A stretch of 64,000 nt of DNA, taken from assembly GCA_964247055.1 (NCBI GenBank), contig OZ176052.1, positions 2,356,001-2,420,000 of the forward strand, given 5' to 3'. The DNA is from Paragordius varius (Eukaryota > Animalia > Nematomorpha). The position numbers were made by a program, and so were the translations under genes. Each line of letters begins with the position of its first letter. Position 1 is the first letter of the stretch. Shown here piece after piece: positions 19,377-64,000 of this stretch. The notes beneath the pieces are model-generated. The model had not been told where the DNA came from and did no database searches. It saw only the letters and a program-made list of their open reading frames with translations.

Positions 19377-22187
19377 ATGAGTACGTATGGTGGTAATTAT
19401 CGGACTACGCATTACTCTCCACCCAGTAAAACAAATTTCAGTCGCCAGCAATGGCTCAACACTTACAGCAGAACTAATAAAGCAGGAGGAGGAGGTGGTG
19501 GCGGTCCCATATATGTAGCTACACATGCATCTACGCTACCGCTGTACCCTAAAACCGGGGCTCAGTTAGTTTTTTATGACACGTCTCCTAAAACTGAATA
19601 CGATATTCGGCAAGAGGAATGTTTGAAGGAACGTTATTGGTGGAGTTTTCTCCTCTCCTCTATCCTTAGTTTTGCGGGTTGTGTCTTTCTAGTCCTGGCT
19701 TACCGTGGTTTATGTTGGGCTTGGGACCAATATTGGGCTCGTCGGCAACTTAAAGCACAATCCGAATTGTTTGGGAATTATTACATAAATCGGGCAAAAA
19801 AGGTTGGTAACGTTTCTGCTCACAACACAAATAACAGTAGTACACCTGGTGGTCATTATGTCTTATCATGTTGCAGAGCATTTAAACAATTTTGGCGACA
19901 AACTTGTTATAGGTATTGTTGTAGATACTTGCATACATCTTGGTTATCTCGAGGTAAAAAGGGTAAAACATCTGTATTCTTGCTTCCCGGAGAATTGGGA
20001 AATGCTCCTGATGCTTCATATCAGTCAGGTGGAAATCTGGAATCACGTAAAAAAATTCCTTCCCTGTACAGTTTATCACAGCTACATACGAATCTATCGA
20101 ACCGCGGTTCAGCCTATGATCTCAATAGCAAATGTAAATATGAACCGCTAAAAACTATAATAACTACTGCAACGTCACCAAACGCCGAAACGGAAACAAC
20201 TCAATTACTCCTCACAACACAAGATAAGCAAGGTAAAGAGACGAAAAAAGTTATGATAGTATCAACAACCCAAAACAATCCATCCACATCTCAGTTACTG
20301 CCATCTCGCATAAAATCCGCCCTAGCCTCTTCAAACAAGAAAGGCGGAGGTCTTGTTGGAACTAAAACTGAAAATACCACGTCTTCTCCGTTCAAAACTA
20401 AAGCGCGAAATGTTATCACAGACAATGCAATGGCAAATAAATCACCACTAGGGCAAAGTTTAAACACCGGCGGAACCGGTATAGTTAAAAGTATGAGCAG
20501 TAATCAGATCAATATTCTTGGCCATGTCCCCGTGGAAAAGGACAAGGCTCTCGTCTCAAACGTTAGGGGTGGAGCTGGTGTCAGACACCATACAACCAGC
20601 ACGGCTGGACGCTCCTCAGAAAGAGAAGGTGGTGGTCAAGGCGGGCCCTTTTTATTGGGTGCGGGTGCGGACACAGCTAATAAAGGTCCTCAACAAACCT
20701 CATCTTTCGTATGGATCGCCGAAGCTAAGGATTGGGCTGGAGAGCTTATGTCAGGACAAACTATCACAGGACGTATTCTGGTATATCTTATTTTTTTATT
20801 ATTAATATTAATGCATATGCAATTCTCGACTTGGTTGATTAAATTTATTTATGACTGTTAGCTTACTAAGTTTAGTATAAGTAAAATTATTTTTGTTTTA
20901 TTATAACGTTCGACATGGATTACTACTTGTAGTAATTATTCATGTATAAAATAGATTCAATTATAACTGAATTTAAATAATTCCAATTTATGTGATAATA
21001 AAATACTGAATGGTTTCAGTTGGTAACTCTTTTGCATAAAAAAATTGTTTTATATTACACCAAAAAAACCTCATAGGTTTAATGTTTCCTCGCATTATGT
21101 TTATTGAATTTTTGTCATCAAAAATTGGACAAAAAAATCAAATTTATTGGATATGTACTTTAGATAAAAGTGACTATTCTAATATATGTAAAATAATAAT
21201 GATATTTAGGTTATTGACTCTTTCATTATGCATTTTTTAACATTAATTTTTTTATTCAAATATTATATTGTAATAAATAATAATAATAATGCTGCAATGG
21301 ACCAATGTTAAAAATAGGATAAAATAATTTATAAAACCATTATATATTAATTTTAAATAATTTTAGTTTATTTATTGTGTAATAAAATTTGGAGAAAATG
21401 AAATGTGCTTGAAGAATAAGTTTCATCATTATTGCTTATGAATATTCATAAAAAAGAAAAAATTGTAAAATATTAAAATATTTTATCCTAGCTTAATAAC
21501 TTAAAACTTATCATAATTTTGATTAAAATAAAAATTGTAAAATTATTTGGATTGATTATTTATTAAGCTGCGGATTTCATATGAAAAGATGCATTAACAT
21601 GTTCATTCAAAAAATAATTTGAAATTGTATTATAATTTATTGATGTAAGAAATAAACTACATTTATTATTTGGACAATTCAAATAAATGTAATCAAAAAA
21701 ATAATCTTTATTCGTGATTTACTTATATTTTTAACAATAATTTATTTTTTAAAAATAAAATAATGATTTAAGGTAAGCAGTCTAAAAACTTTTTGCTTAA
21801 TAACTTAATAAGTGATGAGGTCTGCGGTCTTACAATACATACAAATTTTGAAATTATAGAATAGATCTGTTTATAATATTTGTAGTATATATAACCAATT
21901 TACATATTAATACCGACATTATTATTTTATTCATCCGCAATGTTTAGAAATGAAAAAAAAATATATTTTTATTTTAGGTCTTCCTAGTTTTTTTGTTAAG
22001 CATAGCTTCACTTGTCATTTACTTTATCGATGCGTCGCGGGAACATGTTGAATCTTGCAAAGATTGGTCATCAAGCACCACTCAGCAAGTGGATTTGGCG
22101 TGCAATATATTTTTCATGGTGTACTTCCTTATAAGGGTAAATTAAAATTTTGATTCTTTTTTAGTAACATATTTATAACATATTTAT

Positions 22188-47540: not shown

Positions 47541-47739
47541 TAAGCATAATGTGAAGATTACGTTGATTATATAGAGTTATTTTAGGGATATTTGTACTTT
47601 ATTGTGTTAGATGGATTCAAATGCTTTGGAAAAGTCAACAAAGCACATGTGCAGTTCTTTATTGAATTCTATATGTTTCTCTAGTATCCACCACACATTG
47701 CATATCATATCTCGGCATCCTCCTCCTTTTCAAAAACCA

Positions 47740-47890
47740 GTTTGTTATGGTATAGTAGGTAGGGCGCCGGACTCTTACACTCCGTGCAAGAGTTCGACCC
47801 CGAAACCACGCAATTTTTCCATCATCACTGTCAGCCCTGGGCAGGCGAGTGTTTAAAGGCCTCCACATGTCCGAATACAATTTAAGTCCT
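47740..47890 (+). ncRNA. tRNA-Lys(CTT)-like Pol III unit: tRNA pseudogene or tRNA-derived SINE head
   Basis: A-box-like TGGTATAGTAGG (47748-47759), anticodon-arm-like GGACTCTTAC, B-box AGTTCGACCCC (47791-47801), T5 run at 47814-47818. The acceptor stem pairs poorly, so it is probably not a functional tRNA. Confidence 0.5.
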
Positions 47891-48751: not shown

Positions 48752-51700
48752 TCATTCAACCGGTTTATACAGTAATGTGGTGACATATTTTTTATTGTGT
48801 CTGTGGGTACAACTCAAAACCATAACATTGTCCTGTACAATGATGTTAATAAATATTAAAAAAACATATAAGCATAAATTTGTATTTTCAGAAAAATATA
48901 TTTAATTATTTGGTTTGTATTGGACCAAATTTTTAATAAGTCAGTCCTGGTATCAAAATACTTTTTAAGTACACCAATGAAAAAGTATTATATAATTATA
49001 TTATGGCTGAAAAGGTTAATATATAAAAGATTTATAAAAAAATATTTTATTTTTTTAAAAAAATACATATAGCAAACCATAATTCCAATCCGTTATAAAA
49101 ACTGAATTCCGTATAAAAAAAACGTCGTAAAAATGTGTTATACAACAAAAAACATTCGTTAGCTAAAAATATGATTAATCTAAATCTTTCCTTACCCTTT
49201 GCTCAAAATAAAAGAACCGTTAAAAATTTGATTAAAAATTTCCAAATTAATGAGGAAAAAACCTTGAAACAACAACTTTCTCAAAGTTTAAGTTAAGTGC
49301 ATAAAAAATAATTACCTTAATACTCAAGGCATATAAATGGTTGACCATAACGTGATTTGGTTCAGGCAAGAGTTCAGGTTCGAAATGGTAGGGGATATTT
49401 TGATTAAGTATGACTTGAAGTAATTGAGGAGGTAAGATGGGTGGCCCACTTGGACCGCTATTGCGTGACCTTTCCCCACAAGATCTAGAATGATGTTCCG
49501 TGTGAGAACAACTACTGTTATCATGAGATGAGCCAAATAACCGATCCCAATCAACGAGTAGCCGTGTACTTGGAATATCTTGACTATAACCTATAGCCAT
49601 ACATACATACAGACATTTCGTAATGTGTAAACTTTTGTAAAACGTTATGTGTATACGAAAATAATCGGAAATCATTTTTTTTCGGAAAAATTGATTATAA
49701 CATATATATAAGGATATAAAAATTTATCTTAATGAGTATTTATACGGATTTAATTTTTGGAAAAATAAAATTATATATGGATATTGAAAATTTATATTAA
49801 TGAGTATTTAAACGGATTTAATTTTTGGAAAATCATGACAAAAAACCTTTAAGTATAGTACATAAATGAAAATTTATTTGATCCAAATGAGTATTTATAC
49901 GGATAAAATTTAAGGTAATGATATATCTTGACTATAACAAAGGTATATAATTTTATACATCGGTGTATCTCCGTAATGAGTAAGGTTGTGCATTATGACT
50001 GTGACGGTTTAAGAAAATAACTGGTCAAAAACGTTTTAAGATGTGTAATTAAAAAAATGTTTATCAAATTTAATAGATTGTCATTATTAATGAAGATATT
50101 GAAACGAATCAACAATTAACCTTAATTCGTTTAAATTATTTTATTTTACATTTGTGGTATTGATGACGCATATGTCCGCAAAAGACTCCATTTAAATATT
50201 AATTCCACTGCTTACAATACTATAAATTATATTTTATACATGTGACTTGAAACATTTGACAACAAAGTGTGATTAAATATATTGCATCCCTGAAATTAGT
50301 TTTTTATAATTTGGAGGGCCGTTAACTATGTTTAAAATATCACCCCTTCATGGTTTATACAATCCGTTTTGATAACCACCTATTTTAGGTTTAGATTTAT
50401 AAAAAGGTGGTTGTAAAATGTGCACATTTAATTACCCTTATCATCCAAATAATTTAAATGCGAATGTGGAGAAACGAATTGATTTGAACCGGAGGACGAG
50501 TCTGATGAACGACCAGATGAATCGTGACCAGCTGATGTGGAAGCTAAATCGTCTGCCAGAGCATCGAAAACTTCAAAATCCGATTTTTTTACTTCTATCA
50601 CATTATTTTTGCTCCCAAACGCATTCTCTATCACTGGCTAAATAAAGTAAATTTATATTGCTATTTATTTATTTATATTGCCATGCCAAATTGCATATAC
50701 AGAGCAAAGAGCATCATTATTGTCAGTAAAAAGCGAAAAAAATAACTATATAGACCAATAATATTGCCCTTTGCTTTATATACTTGCTATATGGCATTAA
50801 TTTATAAAAAAACTACAATGTAAACTTACTCATACTGTATAATATATACATACGAGTAAAAATTAATATTTTTTGTAAAATGTATGGCTACTCAAAACTG
50901 ATTTAATACAATAAAATATGGAGTAATGAAATTATTTAAATATTATTATCAATGATTAAGCACATTTCAAACTAGCATATAAGCATTTCTCTTAAAATTT
51001 GAAACTGAAAAATACAAAACTAAAAATTTATTTTGAAATAAGTAAAGATTAAGGTTAGGTAAAATAGTATTTAGTCTTTTTTGATAGAAAAGTACCATTC
51101 TTTCATCATAAGCCCAATTATCATCAACTAAAAATTTGTATTCGTGCTTCCCTTCCGGAATTTCGACTATGGTTGCAAATTGTTCATCACTATAAAACGC
51201 AAAAAATATTTGATAATTATAAAGTATCAAATATAATAAATTTGCACAAAATATAGATTGTCAGTTTATAATAGCTTATTTGAATCGGTTAGCATCGGTT
51301 AAATAATTTTGAAATTAACAATTATATATTTTTATATTAAAAAAATTCCAAATACACCAATTAAAAATTATGGTCGTTAAAAATAGGCTAAATAAAATAA
51401 TAATTTGGGTATACATAATTATAAAATGTATTGTTATATTAAAAATATATTGGAATATATACCATTTACAATTCAAATTCACCCTTGAACAATTCAAATT
51501 TACCTCAAACAATTCATATTCCCCCTAAAAATCGGGATAATAGAACTCATCATTAATATGAAATATATTTTTACGACATAGTTTAATATTATTTCAGCAT
51601 TATATTAATTTTAAACAATTTCATATTTTAAAAATATTATAAAATAAAGTAAATTTTTAATCTTAAAAAACACATAATTTATTTTTAGGGTGTTATTAAA

Positions 51701-54700
51701 TTTAAAGGTGAATTTAAATTGTTTAAGAGTAATGTTCAAGGGTGAATTTGAATTGTTTAAGGGTGAATTTGAATAAATGGTTTATATATATATATATATA
51801 AATATACCATTTATGCAAATATATATATATATATAGCGTTGCATAAAATCTAAATAGAATTTCAAATTTCTGATAGATCGAAACTTTATTGACTGATTTT
51901 AAAATATTGCAGTGGAGTTAAAAAAATTAATTAGCTAATATTGTTTATTATTATTAATGATTTTTAATTCAATCGATTAAATAATCCTTTAATTCAACAA
52001 CATTTACAATATAACCAATTTTATTATATATGGAATAATTTAGCAAAAAAATAAATTTAATTTTTTTTATTATGGGGGGGGGGGGGGGGGGGGGGGTGAT
52101 ATAAAATTCCAATGTTTAAATTTTATAAATAATAAGCGGTGCTTTAACAAAGTATCACTTAAAATTGGTCAAAACGATGTTTGATTGGAATGGGAAATTT
52201 TTTGAATAAAATAAGGATAAAAAACTGGTACATATAAAAAAATTAAAATTTCCGACAGTTTCTATTAATTTAAGTATCTTTAACCATCCTCTAGCAATCA
52301 TATTAAATGGCACATATCAAAACTAACCTTAATAGAAAAAAATTATCCATTATTATTAAATTTTAACAAGGCTTTCCTGTTTTCCATATTATAGCTTTAC
52401 ATAATACGATATTTAAGGACTTAATAAAACGATCTATCCTAAAAAAAATTATAAACCTATAATAACACTTCCGAAAATTGATATTAAACTTATATTAATG
52501 ACACCTTATTTTTATTGAATGGACAATCCATATTACAGTAAAAACTGGAATATATAGACAAAACGTAAAAATATAAAGACAAATATTTTTTTCTAAAAGA
52601 CTTATTGTGTTAAACTGCAAAATATAAAATAGAAATTTAATTGATAAGACAATCAATTACACATTTTACGATTGTTATATAATGATTTTTATAGAATAAA
52701 TTAGGGTTTGAAGAAGTATGGTTGTCTTTTGAAAAAAAATTTGTCTTTATATTTTTTACGTTACCGTAAAATTTCAATTTTTAGTGTATTTAAAATATAT
52801 TTTGAAACTATAATTTTGGGCTTAAATATCTTATGAAAAATGCTATTAAGGCAATAATTTTAATATAAAATGCTTTGAAAAATGGGTAATTATTTTAATT
52901 TAAACTAAATTTTGATATTTTTACAATGCAAAGAGTGATGCCATCATAGCAATTATTTATTAGTAATAACTTTTGATAAAGTATCGTTAATCCATTTTAA
53001 AACCGAATTTTGTGGAACTTTCTTGAAGACGGTAGTATATGGCACAAAATAACAAAACGAATAAATTAAATTTTCCCCTATATTTTAACAAAAATAAGAT
53101 TTTTTAATATGGACAAACTGTCTTTAACACCATACGTTACTGTTAACTAAATTTTATTATACAGGATTGTTGCTTAGTTTTTACAGACCTAATCGCAACG
53201 ATCCATAATTAACAATTATTTATCATACATATATTTTTACAGCAAATATACAAGTTTTTTTATAAAACTTTCATTGTATGACACTAGGAGAAACAATGTA
53301 AATTGAAATATTTTTGTAAAGTATTCCTGTTTTCTACAATCAACCAATAAATTTAGGATTCATGCCAAAAAAAGTTATATTTATATTAATTTGCTTGTTT
53401 TATTAGGTGTTTTTTTACCATGTAGTTAAGAAATAAAACATGAATACAACAAATATTTGTAATAAAATTGGTATAGGTAAACATACGAAACCTGTAAAAA
53501 TTGAATTAAATATTAGGTATATTTGATACTGCTAAAAATATATTTACATAGCTAGGATATGTCACCTAAGTAGAAAATAGGAGCGATTCATTCAAAATTC
53601 ATATTTTTTATATAATTTGTGTTAAATATGAATACATGTAAAATTGAACCTAAAGTGCCGTGAAATACAATATATAAAAAAATTATATTCTAAGATGCTA
53701 TTTTTAGGCTTTTAATCACGTACTCACAAAAGATAAAATATTAGTGCACGCAAAATATGTTTAGTCATTATAATATATTATGAAAATATAAAACCACCGC
53801 CTTCTTTCTTATCTCTAATATTTTTGATACAATAATACAAAATATATTGCCTAAACATAAAACGCTTTTATAAGTAAAATGTAACTGTTAAAATGCAAAA
53901 ATCAATACTTTGGGCAAATTCAATGTAATTAAAATAAAAAGCTTGCAATTTTTTAAGATTTTTCTTAAAATTTATAATAAATATAATATTTTCATAAATT
54001 AGAATGAATTTAATTTTAAAAAACTGCATAAATAGAAAATGCGTTTACGCAAAAAAACCAGGATGTGGACAAAAATTTAAAAATAGATAAGAAAATGATG
54101 TATAACTATAATTGTCAGTCAGACGATAGCAAAAGTTAAATTATGAATAACTTGTAATATACCTTAAAACCATAGGTATTCGTGATTTCCAGCCATCCCA
54201 GCTCCCCAACAACCAAACTTTGGGTTTATTTCCTCCGCTATATCCACTACTGTTTGTATGATGATGCATTCGATCTCGTAAAGATTTAAACCGAATTTGT
54301 GGAAATATAAAGTGACGTGCTGCACCGTGGTCTTTAGGTGATTTAGAATCTGAACTGGTTGAATTATGTCGACTACGGGCATTATTTGGACCGGTTATAA
54401 CAGTGGAAGAGCTATTTTGGCTAGTGTCGTCAGAATTGGTACTTTGATTAGATTGTTCATTATCCAGGTTGGAGGTGAGTGGAGGTGTAGAAAACTCTTC
54501 ACGGATATCAAATTCTACCCGCTTATGAGGTTCTTTGGCACTAGATATGCCACTATCAATACTAATATTAATAGATGGTTGGCCGGTTAAATACGTAGGT
54601 GTTAATTGTCCAGAGTTTTTTGGATCCCATCTAAACACAGTGGGCAAGTAGTTGCGACCCGATTTACTAATTTTTTTAAAGTTCGGGAAGTAATCAAAAT

Positions 54701-55061
54701 AATTTTTATCACTATGAACACCATGACCAGAATAATAGTTTATTTTATCATCAACTGGAGATTTTAAACTTTCTCCTGGTGGAGTGCTATCATGACGCAT
54801 TCGCCAAAATGCCAATGATGGATAAGCTTGGCTAATAGTTTTGGCCCGGGGTCTAACAAACTTAGGTGATTGCGTGTTAGGATTCACACCTAGGTGCTAA
54901 AAATAAAAAAACGCAAAATATACCTTTACATATATATCTGGCGCTTCTTTATCTATTTTACTTTGCCTAACATTGACATCAAAAAAAGTTCCACTTCTAA
55001 AATCAGAAGATATCTCGTCAAAATCGGGAGTTGCATGCCGCTTTGAATGATGCGCTCCCAT
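48752..55061 (-). CDS. PRKAB: 5'-AMP-activated protein kinase beta subunit (about 490-510 aa depending on the exon-1 donor)
   Basis: Exons 55061-54924 (donor ambiguous), 54896-54163, 51189-51096, 50637-50436, 49590-49316, 48832-48752. N-myristoylation-type start MGAHHSK; CBM48 PTVFRW..VWLLGSWDGW..IPMVLS..EGKHEYKFLVDDNW..NNVIEVKKSDFEVFDALADD; C-terminal PPILPPQLLQVILN..LPEPNHVMVNHLYALSIKDNVMVLSCTHRHNKKYVTTLLYKPVE*. Confidence 0.93.
52074..52096 (+). repeat. G23 homopolymer (a G17 tract lies at 22296-22312)
   Basis: Seen directly. Confidence 0.9.
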
Positions 55062-61600: not shown

Positions 61601-62295
61601 TGTTGTTGTTGCTAAGATCGATTCCGACTAACTGCAACATTGAAATTATAACTTCTCCATTCATTGCGAATACATGATCTGGCGTTTAGTTCGGATAATG
61701 TTTGGTTAATTACTTTGAGGATGTTACCCATCCAACGAGTTCTCCTTCTTCCTCTTTTACGAGCTCCACTCACTTTTCCCAGCATCAGTGACTTTTCAAG
61801 TAGGTTAAATCTCATAATGTGGCCAAAATAGTTTTTGGCGTTAGGCCACCCAGTAGCGACATTTTCGGATTAATTTTATTTACAATAATGGAGCTAGGAA
61901 TCTTGTCTGACCATTTTGTTTGGAGAAGTTTCCTCCACCATAGTTTGTAAGAATTTATTAGTCATTCGGCATATTTTTTCAGCGTCCAGCTTTCGCCCCC
62001 ATATTGTAATGTGGGGAATACTATTGCCTTGATTAATCTGATTTTGGTTTTTAGTTGGATGATGTGGCATCCAAATCCTGTTGTATATGAATGTAAATGC
62101 TTTTGCAAGGGCAATTCTTCGTTTTATTTCTGATGTAGAGTTGTTGTCATTGTTCGTAATACTGCTCCAAATACGTGTAACTGTTTACGATTTCAATCTG
62201 ATTTCCGTTGTGGATTATTGAGTTAGTTAATTAAGCTACATGTATTACCTTTGTTTTATTAAGTGAATTTTAATCCGAATTTATTGCATTCAGAT
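61601..62295 (-). mobile_element. RTE-type LINE 3' fragment, inverted close relative of 60285-60980
   Basis: Its reverse complement aligns almost base for base with 60285-60980; tail CTTAGCAACAACAAC. Confidence 0.85.
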
Positions 62296-62419
62296 GTTTT
62301 TTTTACCAAAAATATTGATTTTATACCTTCTCCGAACATTAGACATAATTATATTATATTCCTTACATACCCTTAACATATTTCTCATTAAATTCTCCCA
62401 TTCTAAGCACATTCTGTTT

Positions 62420-64000
62420 ATGCTGAAATCACGCAATCTCAGCATCCGTATCGGAACGTGGAATTTACGCGGAGCTTATAACAATAATAATTTAGATATA
62501 GTAGTTAAAGAAATGACCAAGCATAAAATTGACATGCTAGGAATTTCAGAACCACACATTCCCTCTACCGGAACTTTAAAATTTGACAATAATATACTGT
62601 ATTACTCCGGCCATGACTCGTTTAAATACAACGGTGTCGGTAAGCTAGCTAATTTATCTGACATTTTTAATCCAATCCATAAACATATAATTGCAATCCG
62701 CATACAAACAACCCCTCAACCCATTACAATCTTTCAAATTTACGCCCCTACCTCCACTTACAGCGATGACGACTGTGAAAATTTTTTACAGTGATCTCGA
62801 CTTGGCGATTTCCAAATATCAAAAAAGATATCATATTTATCTTAGGCGAATTCAATTCAATCATAGAAAAAGATAAAACGTCTTCTATGACGGGTGACAT
62901 AGGCTTGGGCATAAAAAACGAGAGGAGATAGATTGATTGAATTTTGTGCTAACCATCGTTTCTTCGTCTCAAACACCTTATTTAAACAGCCCAAACGACG
63001 TCTATACACTGGCGTTCCCCGTGTCAGAGATACCAAATTCACTTCATATTAGGTATGGTTAAATATAAAAGTTCATTTAATAATGTCAAATGCCTACCAG
63101 GATCGGATTGCTTCAGCGACGCACAACCTATTGATCGCCAAACTCCGCATTAAATTACAACTCCCCAAAATATCCAAACCCACCAGAACAAGATTAAATT
63201 ATGATACAATTGACGACAAGTTTAGCACCGCTTTATCAAATCGTTTCGAGTGTCTTGATCATAATTCCGAAAACTATAACATTATAAATTCCTTTTGGAA
63301 CGCTATACACACAATCTGCAGAGATACAGCGGACGAATTTATTCAGCCTCTCAAACATACAAAACAAAAAATAAAATTGACAACAAAAAGTCGTGAGATT
63401 GCAGAAAAACGTAGAGAATCCAAAATCAAAGCAAATGGGATAGTACAAACAACTACAGCGAATTTTAAAAGATTACATGAGAGGACAAAAATAATTATTA
63501 TGACCAACTTGTGAAAAATTAGAAAGAGACGCCAAAAATAACCGAAACCCTTTTGCCCATACAAACAATATTATTCCACACAAAAAAGCTTTTTACAAGA
63601 GACCTACGAGAAACGACAACAACTCAATCGTCACCGAAAAAGACGAAATCCGCAACTGGCTTAAACACAAGTAGACTTTACAACGTAAATTATTCCCAGA
63701 CTATCAACGAACCTACTCAAGAGAAAGACCCACCTAAAATGAAAGAAGAAGAAGTTGAACACGCTATAAAACACTCTAGTATAGGCTATTCAGAGGGGCA
63801 CAGAGACATCCATACTGAAATAATAAAATATATCCCAATCGATATACTTACCAAATTATTTCAAAATATATTTGAGATGGAAATAATTCCTGAGGATTGG
63901 TGTACATCAACTATGATTCTTATTTTAAAAGAGGGTAATCCAGAACTGTGCGACAACTATCGCACCATAACGCTCATTAACCAGGTGGCCAAAGTTTTCC
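62420..64000 (+). mobile_element. RTE-type LINE, 5' part (APE endonuclease plus RT start), frameshifted; runs off the window
   Basis: IRIGTWNLRG..IDMLGISE..YSGH..NGVG..ITIFQIYAPT; GEFNS; later DIHTEIIK..EDWCTSTMILILK.GN..CDNYRTITLINQVAKV. Confidence 0.85.

What the first reader, a model, noticed from the sequence alone, without database searches (positions are those of the whole stretch)
54219..54626. AMPK-beta glycogen-binding module split by a 136-aa segment
Canonical CBM48 reads PTVFRW-(about 6 aa)-VYLSGSF. Here 136 Ser/Asn/Thr-rich residues separate PTVFRW from VWLLGSWDGW inside one exon, while both sugar-stacking Trp, the YKF motif and the S108-equivalent Ser (IPMVLS) are retained. This looks like an intact CBM carrying a large disordered loop, an architecture I do not know from other AMPK-beta subunits.
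Basis: partly seen in the sequence, partly recalled or inferred. Interest (0 to 1): 0.75.

Follow-up and report, generated by a model that had tools for sequence, protein, structure and literature searches.

The report
Hairworm AMPK-beta with giant sugar-module loop
This worm's copy of a conserved energy-sensor subunit (AMPK-beta) has about 130 extra, probably floppy, amino acids in one surface loop of its glycogen-binding module; this looks like an extreme case of loop growth seen in a related hairworm and in other genes of this genome, not a new kind of protein.

Summary
On the minus strand, 54626..54219 is 136 open codons between PTVFRW (strand beta1) and VWLLGSWDGW (strand beta2) of an AMPK-beta glycogen-binding module (CBM), inside one 734-nt exon of a six-exon, 507-codon gene.

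The segment looks coding:
- GC is 0.39, against 0.22 in the introns.
- Codon periodicity is strong (p = 7e-8; intron controls 0.10 or more).
- No GT-AG pair removes it while sparing beta2.

No RNA evidence could be obtained, so inclusion in the mRNA is inferred.

The closest relative is the hairworm Gordionus. Its orthologue has 25 residues at the same site, where the canonical loop has 6. Its second paralogue has 6, and nematodes have 6-13. None of the 120 best relatives approaches 136. A search of 1.84 billion proteins found nothing similar to the insert.

AlphaFold keeps beta1 in the Gordionus module and models the loop as lower-confidence coil.

A BK-channel gene in the same window has a 328-residue linker, against 28 in Drosophila. 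Unchecked scan notes report similar inserts in Rheb, KDM7 and PanK elsewhere in this genome.

Verdict: a real, extreme loop expansion in a fast-evolving hairworm paralogue, probably disordered and largely passive. Interest is modest.

The parts
54924..55061 (-). Exon 1 of the AMPK-beta gene. It starts MGAHHSK, which fits the N-myristoylation consensus (Gly2, Ser6), and ends at the donor AAG|GTATAT.
   Evidence: tblastn of Gordionus P0001 residues 1-113.
54897..54923 (-). Intron 1, 27 nt, GT..AG. Its last three bases (tag) read as an in-frame stop, so it must be spliced out.
   Evidence: a stop appears in the read-through; agrees with scan note s1-267138.
54163..54896 (-). Exon 2, 734 nt (244 codons plus 2 nt). 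It holds the N-terminal linker, CBM strand beta1, the 136-residue segment, strand beta2 and the first stacking Trp.
   Evidence: The Pfam AMPK1_CBM profile (positions 13-30) matches its last residues weakly, at 13.6 bits.
54801..54854 (-). An 18-residue motif, RPRAKTISQAYPSLAFWR, identical to Gordionus P0001. The whole-library search found it in no other protein.
54627..54644 (-). CBM strand beta1, PTVFRW. [quoted passage not shown]
   Evidence: Arg83's role from PMC8217686; the residue mapping is my own.
54219..54626 (-). The 136-codon insertion in the beta1-beta2 hairpin loop. It is open in one frame only, is Ser/Asn/Thr/Pro-rich, and matches no known domain or relative.
54510..54524 (-). 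KRVEF, which fits the RVxF pattern for a PP1-docking motif, inside the insertion. This is a pattern match only.
   Evidence: scan note s1-267213.
54360..54377 (-). RSRHNS, which fits the basophilic-kinase pattern RxRxxS, inside the insertion. This is a pattern match only.
54189..54218 (-). CBM strand beta2 and the first sugar-stacking Trp (VWLLGSWDGW; the last W is the W100 equivalent).
51096..51189 (-). Exon 3. Its first base completes the Ser108-equivalent codon (AG|T). It also holds EYKF (K126 equivalent) and DDNW (W133 equivalent).
   Evidence: Pfam AMPK1_CBM 36.2 bits against a cut-off of 26.8.
50436..50637 (-). Exon 4. It holds the end of the CBM (FGSKNN, the L146-N150 region), KKSDFEVFDAL and a Ser-rich linker.
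49316..49590 (-). Exon 5. It holds a linker and the first part of the C-terminal domain that binds the alpha and gamma subunits.
   Evidence: 68% identity to P0001; Pfam AMPKBI 45.7 bits against a cut-off of 24.3.
48752..48832 (-). Exon 6. It holds the end of the AMPKBI domain (to ...TLLYKPVE) and the TGA stop.
   Evidence: Pfam AMPKBI 35.9 bits.

Best explanation
This is a functional-looking AMPK-beta gene of a horsehair worm (Nematomorpha). It is the orthologue of a fast-evolving, hairworm-specific paralogue. The turn between strands beta1 and beta2 of its glycogen-binding module has grown from the canonical 6 residues to 136.

The extra residues are translated as part of exon 2. They most likely form a disordered surface loop that leaves the beta-sandwich, the sugar-binding residues, the Ser108 equivalent and the C-terminal alpha/gamma-binding domain intact.

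The loop is rooted two residues after the Arg83 equivalent, at the pole of beta2 opposite the first sugar-stacking Trp. I therefore expect glycogen binding to be spared.

The expansion is best read as one instance of a lineage-wide and genome-wide tendency to inflate loops and linkers with polar sequence. It would be tolerated because this turn is solvent-exposed and already length-variable in nematodes and hairworms. I do not read it as a purpose-built domain.

Shown: the open frame, coding periodicity, absence of splice pairs, retained motifs, orthology, loop lengths in relatives, and absence of relatives of the insert.

Inferred: inclusion in the mRNA, disorder, an intact fold, and a passive role.
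For: Gene and frame:
- The frame is open for 136 codons in one frame only.
- GC is 0.39, the same as the flanking coding sequence, against 0.22 in intron 2 and 0.19 in intron 1.
- T at codon positions 1/2/3 is 0.18/0.15/0.44, like the flanking exon parts. The heterogeneity test gives chi-square 44, p = 7e-8, while 16 intron control windows all give p of 0.10 or more.
- Only one fair donor exists inside the segment. Its in-frame acceptors give 33-nt or 42-nt excisions, or a 393-nt one that would delete beta2.

Family membership:
- AMPK1_CBM and AMPKBI score above their Pfam cut-offs on exons 3, 5 and 6.
- All five introns have GT-AG ends.
- Key residues are retained.

Relatives:
- Gordionus P0001 has 25 residues at the same site. 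Its paralogue P0011 has 6. The loop is 6 residues in 79 of 120 relatives and up to 13 in nematodes.
- Window exon 5 groups with P0001 (SH-aLRT 98), and both group with P0011 (98), on a long branch.
- AlphaFold2 on P0001 with 66 sequences gives beta1 a pLDDT of 94, the loop 58-67 as coil, and beta2 95. The module superposes on solved CBMs at target-normalised TM 0.92-0.94 and 1.5-1.7 A.

The insert itself:
- Mean hydropathy is 0.366, below the fold/unfold boundary of 0.419. 78% of residues are polar or disorder-promoting.
- It has no Pfam hit and no tandem repeat.
- It has no copy elsewhere in the window.
- phmmer of exon 2 against 1.84 billion proteins found only Gordionus, through the N-terminal motif.

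Genome trend:
- The BK-channel S0-S1 linker in the same window is 328 residues, against 28 in Drosophila Slowpoke.
- This protein also has smaller expansions than Gordionus elsewhere.
Against: - No transcript evidence exists.
- The window's own CBM could not be folded, because that would need a joined exon model. The fold evidence is by proxy from Gordionus.
- The single-sequence AlphaFold run on exon 2 (pLDDT 34) is uninformative.
- The loop has normal sequence entropy (3.87 bits), no repeats, and a hydrophobic patch (HFIFPQIRF). It is not a simple low-complexity run and could hold functional motifs.
- Whether this genome keeps a paralogue with the canonical loop is unknown.
- The survey of relatives covers only the best 120 proteins of 188-598 residues.
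Confidence: 0.65

Rival explanations
1. The loop is a selected regulatory tether. Rooted next to the Arg83 equivalent at the interface between the CBM and the kinase N-lobe (the ADaM site), it would carry docking and phosphorylation motifs: KRVEF as a PP1-type RVxF, RSRHNS as a basophilic-kinase site, and several SP/TP and CK2-like sites. These would control CBM docking or dephosphorylation of the kinase in a hairworm-specific AMPK complex.
For: - The insertion point is two residues after the Arg that contacts alpha-Asp88 and phospho-Ser108 at the ADaM site (PMC8217686).
- The motif patterns are present.
- The same site is already expanded in the Gordionus orthologue but not in its paralogue, so the trait has been kept since before the two hairworms split.
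- Sequence entropy is normal and there are no repeats.
Against: - Short motifs of this kind are expected by chance in 136 polar residues.
- The Gordionus loop and this insert share no detectable similarity: the local alignment score of 22 equals the mean of shuffled sequences.
- Similar large inserts occur in unrelated proteins of this genome.
- No experimental or comparative evidence supports any of the motifs.
Confidence: 0.12
2. All or part of the segment is removed from the mature mRNA, as an in-frame intron within an exon (an 'exitron') or an alternative splice. The protein would then have a much shorter loop.
For: - No RNA evidence was available.
- This genome is reported to splice unusual, very short introns (scan notes seen). 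Intron 1 of this gene is 27 nt.
- One fair donor (TAC|GTATTT at 54594) pairs in frame with acceptors ending at 54562 (33 nt) or 54553 (42 nt).
Against: - Composition and codon periodicity are those of coding sequence.
- No GT-AG pair excises the bulk of the segment while keeping beta2.
- The 33/42-nt candidates would remove only 11-14 residues.
- The real introns of this gene have 19-22% GC, against 39% here.
Confidence: 0.1
3. This is a decaying or neofunctionalised paralogue whose CBM no longer works as a glycogen-binding or kinase-docking module. The split between beta1 and beta2 would be tolerated because a paralogue with the canonical loop does the standard job.
For: - The branch leading to this gene and Gordionus P0001 is long (1.41 changes per column).
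- Gordionus keeps a second paralogue with a canonical loop (P0011).
- Pfam does not match beta1 in P0001 or here.
Against: - All six exons are open with canonical splice sites.
- The sugar-contact residues, the Ser108 equivalent, PTVFRW and the AMPKBI domain are conserved. Exon 6 is 85% identical to Gordionus.
- AlphaFold keeps beta1 in the Gordionus module at pLDDT 94.
Confidence: 0.1
4. An assembly artefact placed foreign or duplicated sequence inside exon 2.
For: The runs that hold this stretch hold only 45-55% of its sampled words.
Against: - The segment is exactly in frame on both sides, has coding periodicity in that frame and has no copy elsewhere in the window.
- A 45-55% share is also what about 2% divergence between individuals would give.
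Confidence: 0.03

Closest known systems
AMPK-beta paralogue of Gordionus sp. m RMFG-2023 (P0001, 342 aa; NCBI 'unnamed protein product')
   Same: - It is the orthologue by per-exon identity (55-85%) and by the tree.
- It has the same exon 2/3 boundary: its isoform P0002 reads through into the intron at the same point.
- It shares the identical 18-residue N-terminal motif.
- It has the same insertion site between FRW and the beta2 strand, and the same GSWDGWK and Ser108-equivalent residues.
   Different: - Its loop is 25 residues, not 136, with no detectable sequence similarity to the window's insert.
- The window's protein is about 165 residues longer overall and has further small expansions.
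Canonical metazoan AMPK beta1/beta2 (for example PDB 4CFE, 4RER, 1Z0M, 4YEE)
   Same: - N-myristoylation signal.
- A CBM48-type module with the W100, K126, W133 and N150 equivalents and Ser108.
- The C-terminal AMPKBI domain (residue roles from PMC6274970 and PMC4032982).
   Different: - The canonical beta1-beta2 turn is 6 residues (79 of the 120 relatives). Here it is 136.
- The L146 equivalent is Phe.
- The N-terminal linker is longer and carries a hairworm-specific motif.
Small loop insertions known in this module: Thr101 in mammalian beta2, and the VPM insertion in plant AKIN-beta-gamma
   Same: They are loop-length changes within an otherwise conserved CBM (PMC6274970; PMC4032982).
   Different: Those insertions are 1-3 residues long, lie next to the first stacking Trp and tune sugar specificity. 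This one is about 130 residues long and lies at the other end of beta2, next to the Arg83 equivalent.
Long polar or low-complexity inserts inside conserved domains of proteins from AT-rich genomes (Plasmodium falciparum, Dictyostelium); from my own knowledge, not tested here
   Same: - The genome is AT-rich (window GC 0.27).
- The insert is polar, rich in Ser/Asn/Thr, sits in a surface loop and leaves the flanking fold motifs intact.
- A second example lies in the same window.
   Different: - The insert here is not a homopolymer or repeat run (entropy 3.87 bits, no tandem repeat).
- I did not find the phenomenon described for Nematomorpha in the papers I searched.

Membership tests
AMPK/SNF1 beta subunit | CBM48-type glycogen-binding module (Pfam PF16561, AMPK1_CBM) | tested here: met
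   - Exon 3 alone scores 36.2 bits against a cut-off of 26.8, on profile positions 34-62.
- The exon 2 tail matches positions 13-30 at 13.6 bits.
- Profile positions 1-10 (beta1) are not matched by the HMM, either here or in Gordionus P0001, because of the loop.
- A single continuous match could not be tested, because the joined model was not submitted.
AMPK/SNF1 beta subunit | C-terminal alpha/gamma interaction domain (Pfam PF04739, AMPKBI) | tested here: met
   Exon 5 scores 45.7 bits (profile 5-47) and exon 6 scores 35.9 bits (profile 48-71). The cut-off is 24.3.
AMPK/SNF1 beta subunit | N-terminal myristoylation signal (Met-Gly, with a small residue at position 6) | tested here: met
   The protein starts MGAHHSK. 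Gordionus starts MGAHQSK. Actual myristoylation was not tested.
AMPK/SNF1 beta subunit | Carbohydrate-contact residues (W100, K126, W133, N150 in rat beta1 numbering) | tested here: met
   - GSWDGW, EYKF, DDNW and KNN are all present.
- The residue roles come from PMC6274970 and PMC4032982.
- The L146 equivalent is Phe.
- The position mapping comes from alignment to relatives and from my own numbering.
AMPK/SNF1 beta subunit | Ser108-equivalent autophosphorylation site and Arg83 equivalent (ADaM-site residues) | tested here: met
   - The Ser is encoded by the split codon AG|T across intron 2.
- The Arg is the one in PTVFRW.
- Their roles come from PMC8217686.
- Phosphorylation was not tested.
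AMPK/SNF1 beta subunit | Short beta1-beta2 hairpin (6 residues between FRW and the beta2 strand). This is typical of the family, not defining. | tested here: not met
   The loop is 136 residues here, 25 in Gordionus P0001 and 6-13 in the other 118 relatives that could be measured.
AMPK/SNF1 beta subunit | Glycogen or cyclodextrin binding, and assembly into the alpha-beta-gamma heterotrimer | not testable with these tools
   This needs recombinant protein.

The most novel reading that the evidence does not exclude
Hairworms evolved a dedicated AMPK-beta paralogue whose beta1-beta2 hairpin, next to the ADaM-site arginine, became a long disordered regulatory arm. The arm would recruit a phosphatase (through KRVEF) or be phosphorylated (at RSRHNS and the SP/TP sites) to gate docking of the glycogen-binding module on the kinase. 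That would add a new input to AMPK in a parasite whose adults do not feed.
Probability: 0.1. Interest if true: 0.6.

Novelty: new variant of a known kind. Interest (0 to 1): 0.3.

Why it matters
If the loop is translated, it shows that the beta1-beta2 turn of the AMPK glycogen-binding module can accept about 130 extra residues right next to the Arg83/ADaM interface. That is useful to know for engineering tags or sensors into AMPK-beta.

It also gives a natural with-loop / without-loop pair, the long-loop and canonical paralogues in hairworms, for asking whether CBM docking on the kinase is sensitive to bulk at that corner.

More broadly, it is one of at least two verified cases in a single 64-kb window of very large polar inserts inside conserved proteins of this AT-rich hairworm genome. 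A genome-wide count may be the more interesting result. Taken alone, the finding is a modest curiosity.

Tried and rejected
RNA evidence:
No reads were laid.
They took part only passively: in the whole-window subject of local BLAST scripts, in the whole-window GC count of a local script and in a whole-window ORF listing.
- The share of words in the holder runs (0.45-0.55) cannot separate RNA from DNA or decide the splicing question. No holder is on record as RNA.

Protein and locus look-ups:
- The word search with exon 2 found only the two Gordionus isoforms.
- The look-up of encoding contigs for P0001, P0002 and P0011 found no locus. The Gordionus gene structure could not be compared.

Ideas tested and rejected:
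- Homology between the Gordionus 25-residue loop and the insert: rejected, because the score equals the shuffled mean.
- An internal duplicate of beta1 (HFIFPQIRF against PTVFRW): rejected.
- Origin from a tandem repeat or a dispersed repeat: none found.
- A known domain in the insert: none in Pfam, and only chance-level PDB hits.

Weak or omitted steps:
- The single-sequence AlphaFold run on exon 2 gave pLDDT 34 and tells us nothing either way.
Full report
**What is there**

The finding lies on the minus strand. Reading down from 54644, the sequence encodes PTVFRW. Then come 136 open codons (54626..54219, Asp to Lys). Then comes VWLLGSWDGWKSRIPMVL, followed by a GT donor at 54162.

The open frame starts at an AG acceptor (54898-54897). 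That acceptor ends a 27-nt intron whose last three bases read as an in-frame stop. Upstream of it is a first exon beginning MGAHHSK.

Local tblastn with the closest relative places four more exons, and I read their splice sites directly. The model is:
- exon 1: 55061-54924
- exon 2: 54896-54163
- exon 3: 51189-51096
- exon 4: 50637-50436
- exon 5: 49590-49316
- exon 6: 48832-48755, followed by a TGA stop

This makes 1521 coding nucleotides, or 507 codons. All five introns have GT-AG ends.

**Is it an AMPK-beta?**

Yes. Taken one exon at a time:
- Exon 3 scores 36.2 bits on Pfam AMPK1_CBM (cut-off 26.8).
- Exons 5 and 6 score 45.7 and 35.9 bits on AMPKBI (cut-off 24.3). Together they cover profile positions 5-71.
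- The tail of exon 2 matches CBM profile positions 13-30 weakly.

The residues that the literature names as carbohydrate contacts are W100, K126, W133 and N150 (PMC6274970; PMC4032982). Here they are present as GSWDGW, EYKF, DDNW and KNN. The Ser108 equivalent is a split codon, AG at the end of exon 2 plus T at the start of exon 3. It is also Ser in the relative.

**Is the 408-nt segment coding or an unspliced intron?**

Everything that can be read from the DNA says coding.
- It is open in one frame only. The chance of that is 2e-4 at its own composition and 3e-6 at intron composition.
- Its GC is 0.39, equal to the flanking coding parts. Intron 2 has 0.22 and intron 1 has 0.19.
- T makes up 18%, 15% and 44% of codon positions 1, 2 and 3, the same pattern as the neighbouring exon sequence. 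The heterogeneity test gives chi-square 44, p = 7e-8. Sixteen 408-nt control windows from intron 2 all give p of 0.10 or more.
- Only one fair donor lies inside the segment (TAC|GTATTT at 54594). In frame, it pairs with acceptors giving a 33-nt or 42-nt excision, or with one at 54202 that would delete strand beta2. No splice restores a canonical loop.

What is missing is RNA. No run that holds this stretch is on record as RNA. No protein of this species is in the protein collections.

**Relatives**

The word search with exon 2 found only two isoforms of one gene of Gordionus sp. m RMFG-2023, a horsehair worm. The full-length form is P0001 (342 aa). It reads AVFRW, then 25 residues, then VSIVGSWDGWKK. 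The same turn is therefore already four times its usual length there.

I searched with P0001 and aligned the 120 best relatives. I measured the distance from the Trp of FRW/FKW to the Gly of GSF/GSW:

| Distance (residues) | Proteins |
|---|---|
| 1 (an N-terminally truncated fragment) | 1 |
| 10 | 79 |
| 11-17 | 39, the longest of them nematodes |
| 29 | P0001 only |

In the window, counted in the same way, the distance is 140.

Gordionus has a second AMPK-beta, P0011, with the canonical 6-residue loop.

A quick maximum-likelihood tree of 30 named relatives plus the window's exon 5 gave two results. Exon 5 groups with P0001 (SH-aLRT 98), and that pair groups with P0011 (98), on a long branch. 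This suggests a duplication in the hairworm lineage followed by fast evolution of the long-loop copy. The caveats are that only one exon of the window gene was used and that long-branch effects are possible.

The Gordionus loop and the window's insert show no similarity. The local alignment score is 22, equal to the mean of shuffled sequences.

phmmer of exon 2 against 1.84 billion representative proteins returned only the Gordionus protein, through the N-terminal motif. The insert therefore has no detectable relative anywhere. It has no Pfam domain, no tandem repeat and no copy elsewhere in the window.

**Structure**

AlphaFold2 on Gordionus P0001, with 66 aligned sequences, models residues 112-120 (beta1) as a strand at pLDDT 94. 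It models the 25-residue loop as coil at pLDDT 58-67, and beta2 at pLDDT 95. The module superposes on solved AMPK CBMs (4YEE, 1Z0M) at target-normalised TM 0.92-0.94 and 1.5-1.7 A. The alignment has about 20 more columns than the target chains have residues, consistent with the loop being left unaligned.

So, by proxy, a long loop at this turn is compatible with an intact module. The window's own module spans three exons and was not folded. The single-sequence run on exon 2 gave pLDDT 34 and says nothing.

The insert's mean hydropathy is 0.366, below the charge-hydropathy boundary of 0.419. In all, 78% of its residues are polar or disorder-promoting. Its entropy is normal (3.87 bits), and it contains one hydrophobic patch.

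**Where the loop sits, and what it may do**

The Arg of PTVFRW corresponds to beta-Arg83. [quoted passage not shown] The residue mapping is my own.

The insertion begins two residues later. The first sugar-stacking Trp lies at the far end of beta2. I therefore infer that glycogen binding is spared, and that the loop projects from the corner of the module that faces the kinase N-lobe.

The insert contains several motif patterns:
- KRVEF, an RVxF pattern
- RSRHNS, an RxRxxS pattern
- several SP/TP sites
- several CK2-like sites

These are pattern matches only. They are expected by chance in such a sequence.

**Genome context**

The window has 27% GC. In the same window, a 494-residue ORF (19377-20858, plus strand) matches Drosophila Slowpoke in two stretches. 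Residues 74-114 align with chain residues 35-75 (S0), and residues 443-478 align with chain residues 104-139 (S1). The linker between them is 328 residues here, against 28 in the fly. It is rich in S, G, T and N, and it has coding periodicity.

Compared with Gordionus, the AMPK-beta gene itself also has about 30 extra residues before beta1 and 12 extra in exon 5.

Unchecked notes of this scan report inserts of 141, 211 and about 350 residues in the Rheb, pantothenate kinase and KDM7 domains elsewhere in this genome. I did not test these.

This pattern makes passive, genome-wide loop inflation the most economical reading.

**Verdict**

It still lacks RNA and biochemical evidence.
- The architecture is unmatched in size among the relatives surveyed, but it has a clear precursor in the Gordionus orthologue.
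- I rate it a new variant of a known kind, of modest interest on its own.
- The regulatory-arm reading is not excluded; I give it about 10%.

**Limits**

- The survey covers the best 120 relatives of 188-598 residues only.
- Only one other hairworm genome was accessible, and its locus could not be fetched.
- The species of the window is inferred to be a nematomorph. This rests on the closest relative and on scan notes.

Noticed in passing
window 19377-20858 (+): A 494-residue ORF matches BK/Slowpoke channels at S0 (residues 74-114) and S1 (residues 443-478). The linker between them is 328 residues, against 28 in Drosophila Slowpoke (PDB 7pxe). It is rich in S, G, T and N and has coding periodicity. 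This is a second very large insert in a conserved protein within the same 64 kb.
   Followed up: partly
window 54897-54923 (-): Intron 1 of the AMPK-beta gene is only 27 nt long (GTATAT...TTTTAG). Its last three bases read as an in-frame stop, so it must be spliced. It fits the class of very short introns that other scan notes report for this genome.
   Followed up: partly
window 54801-54854 (-): The 18-residue motif RPRAKTISQAYPSLAFWR is identical between this gene and Gordionus P0001, although the surrounding N-terminal region has diverged. phmmer of exon 2 against 1.84 billion proteins brought up no protein but the Gordionus one, matched over this region. It begins with an RxRxxT pattern that is also present in the consensus of invertebrate AMPK-beta proteins.
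   Followed up: partly
Gordionus proteins P0001 and P0011 (same 34.6-Mb contig): Gordionus has two AMPK-beta paralogues that group together in the tree. Only the one orthologous to the window gene has the expanded loop and the N-terminal motif. Whether the window's genome has the canonical copy is unknown.
   Followed up: partly
window 54562-54594 (-): An in-frame 33-nt GT..AG pair (or a 42-nt pair ending at 54553) lies inside the insert, with a fair donor (TAC|GTATTT). It could be a small optional intron that removes 11-14 residues. It is longer and more GC-rich than the 22-27-nt class.
   Followed up: no
window 49400-49520 (-) and 54660-54750 (-): This protein has further small expansions relative to Gordionus: 12 extra Ser/His/Cys-rich residues in the exon 5 linker, and about 30 extra residues (rich in Tyr, Phe, Asn and Lys) just before strand beta1.
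   Followed up: no
window 62294-63514 (+) and 47600-47880 (-): These ORFs look, from memory, like parts of a non-LTR retrotransposon. The first pair resembles an endonuclease-like N-terminus. The second contains a reverse-transcriptase-like FVDFSKAF motif and lies downstream of the AMPK-beta gene. I ran no search on either.
   Followed up: no
I worked beside them and sent none of their letters as a query to any search tool afterwards.
   Followed up: no
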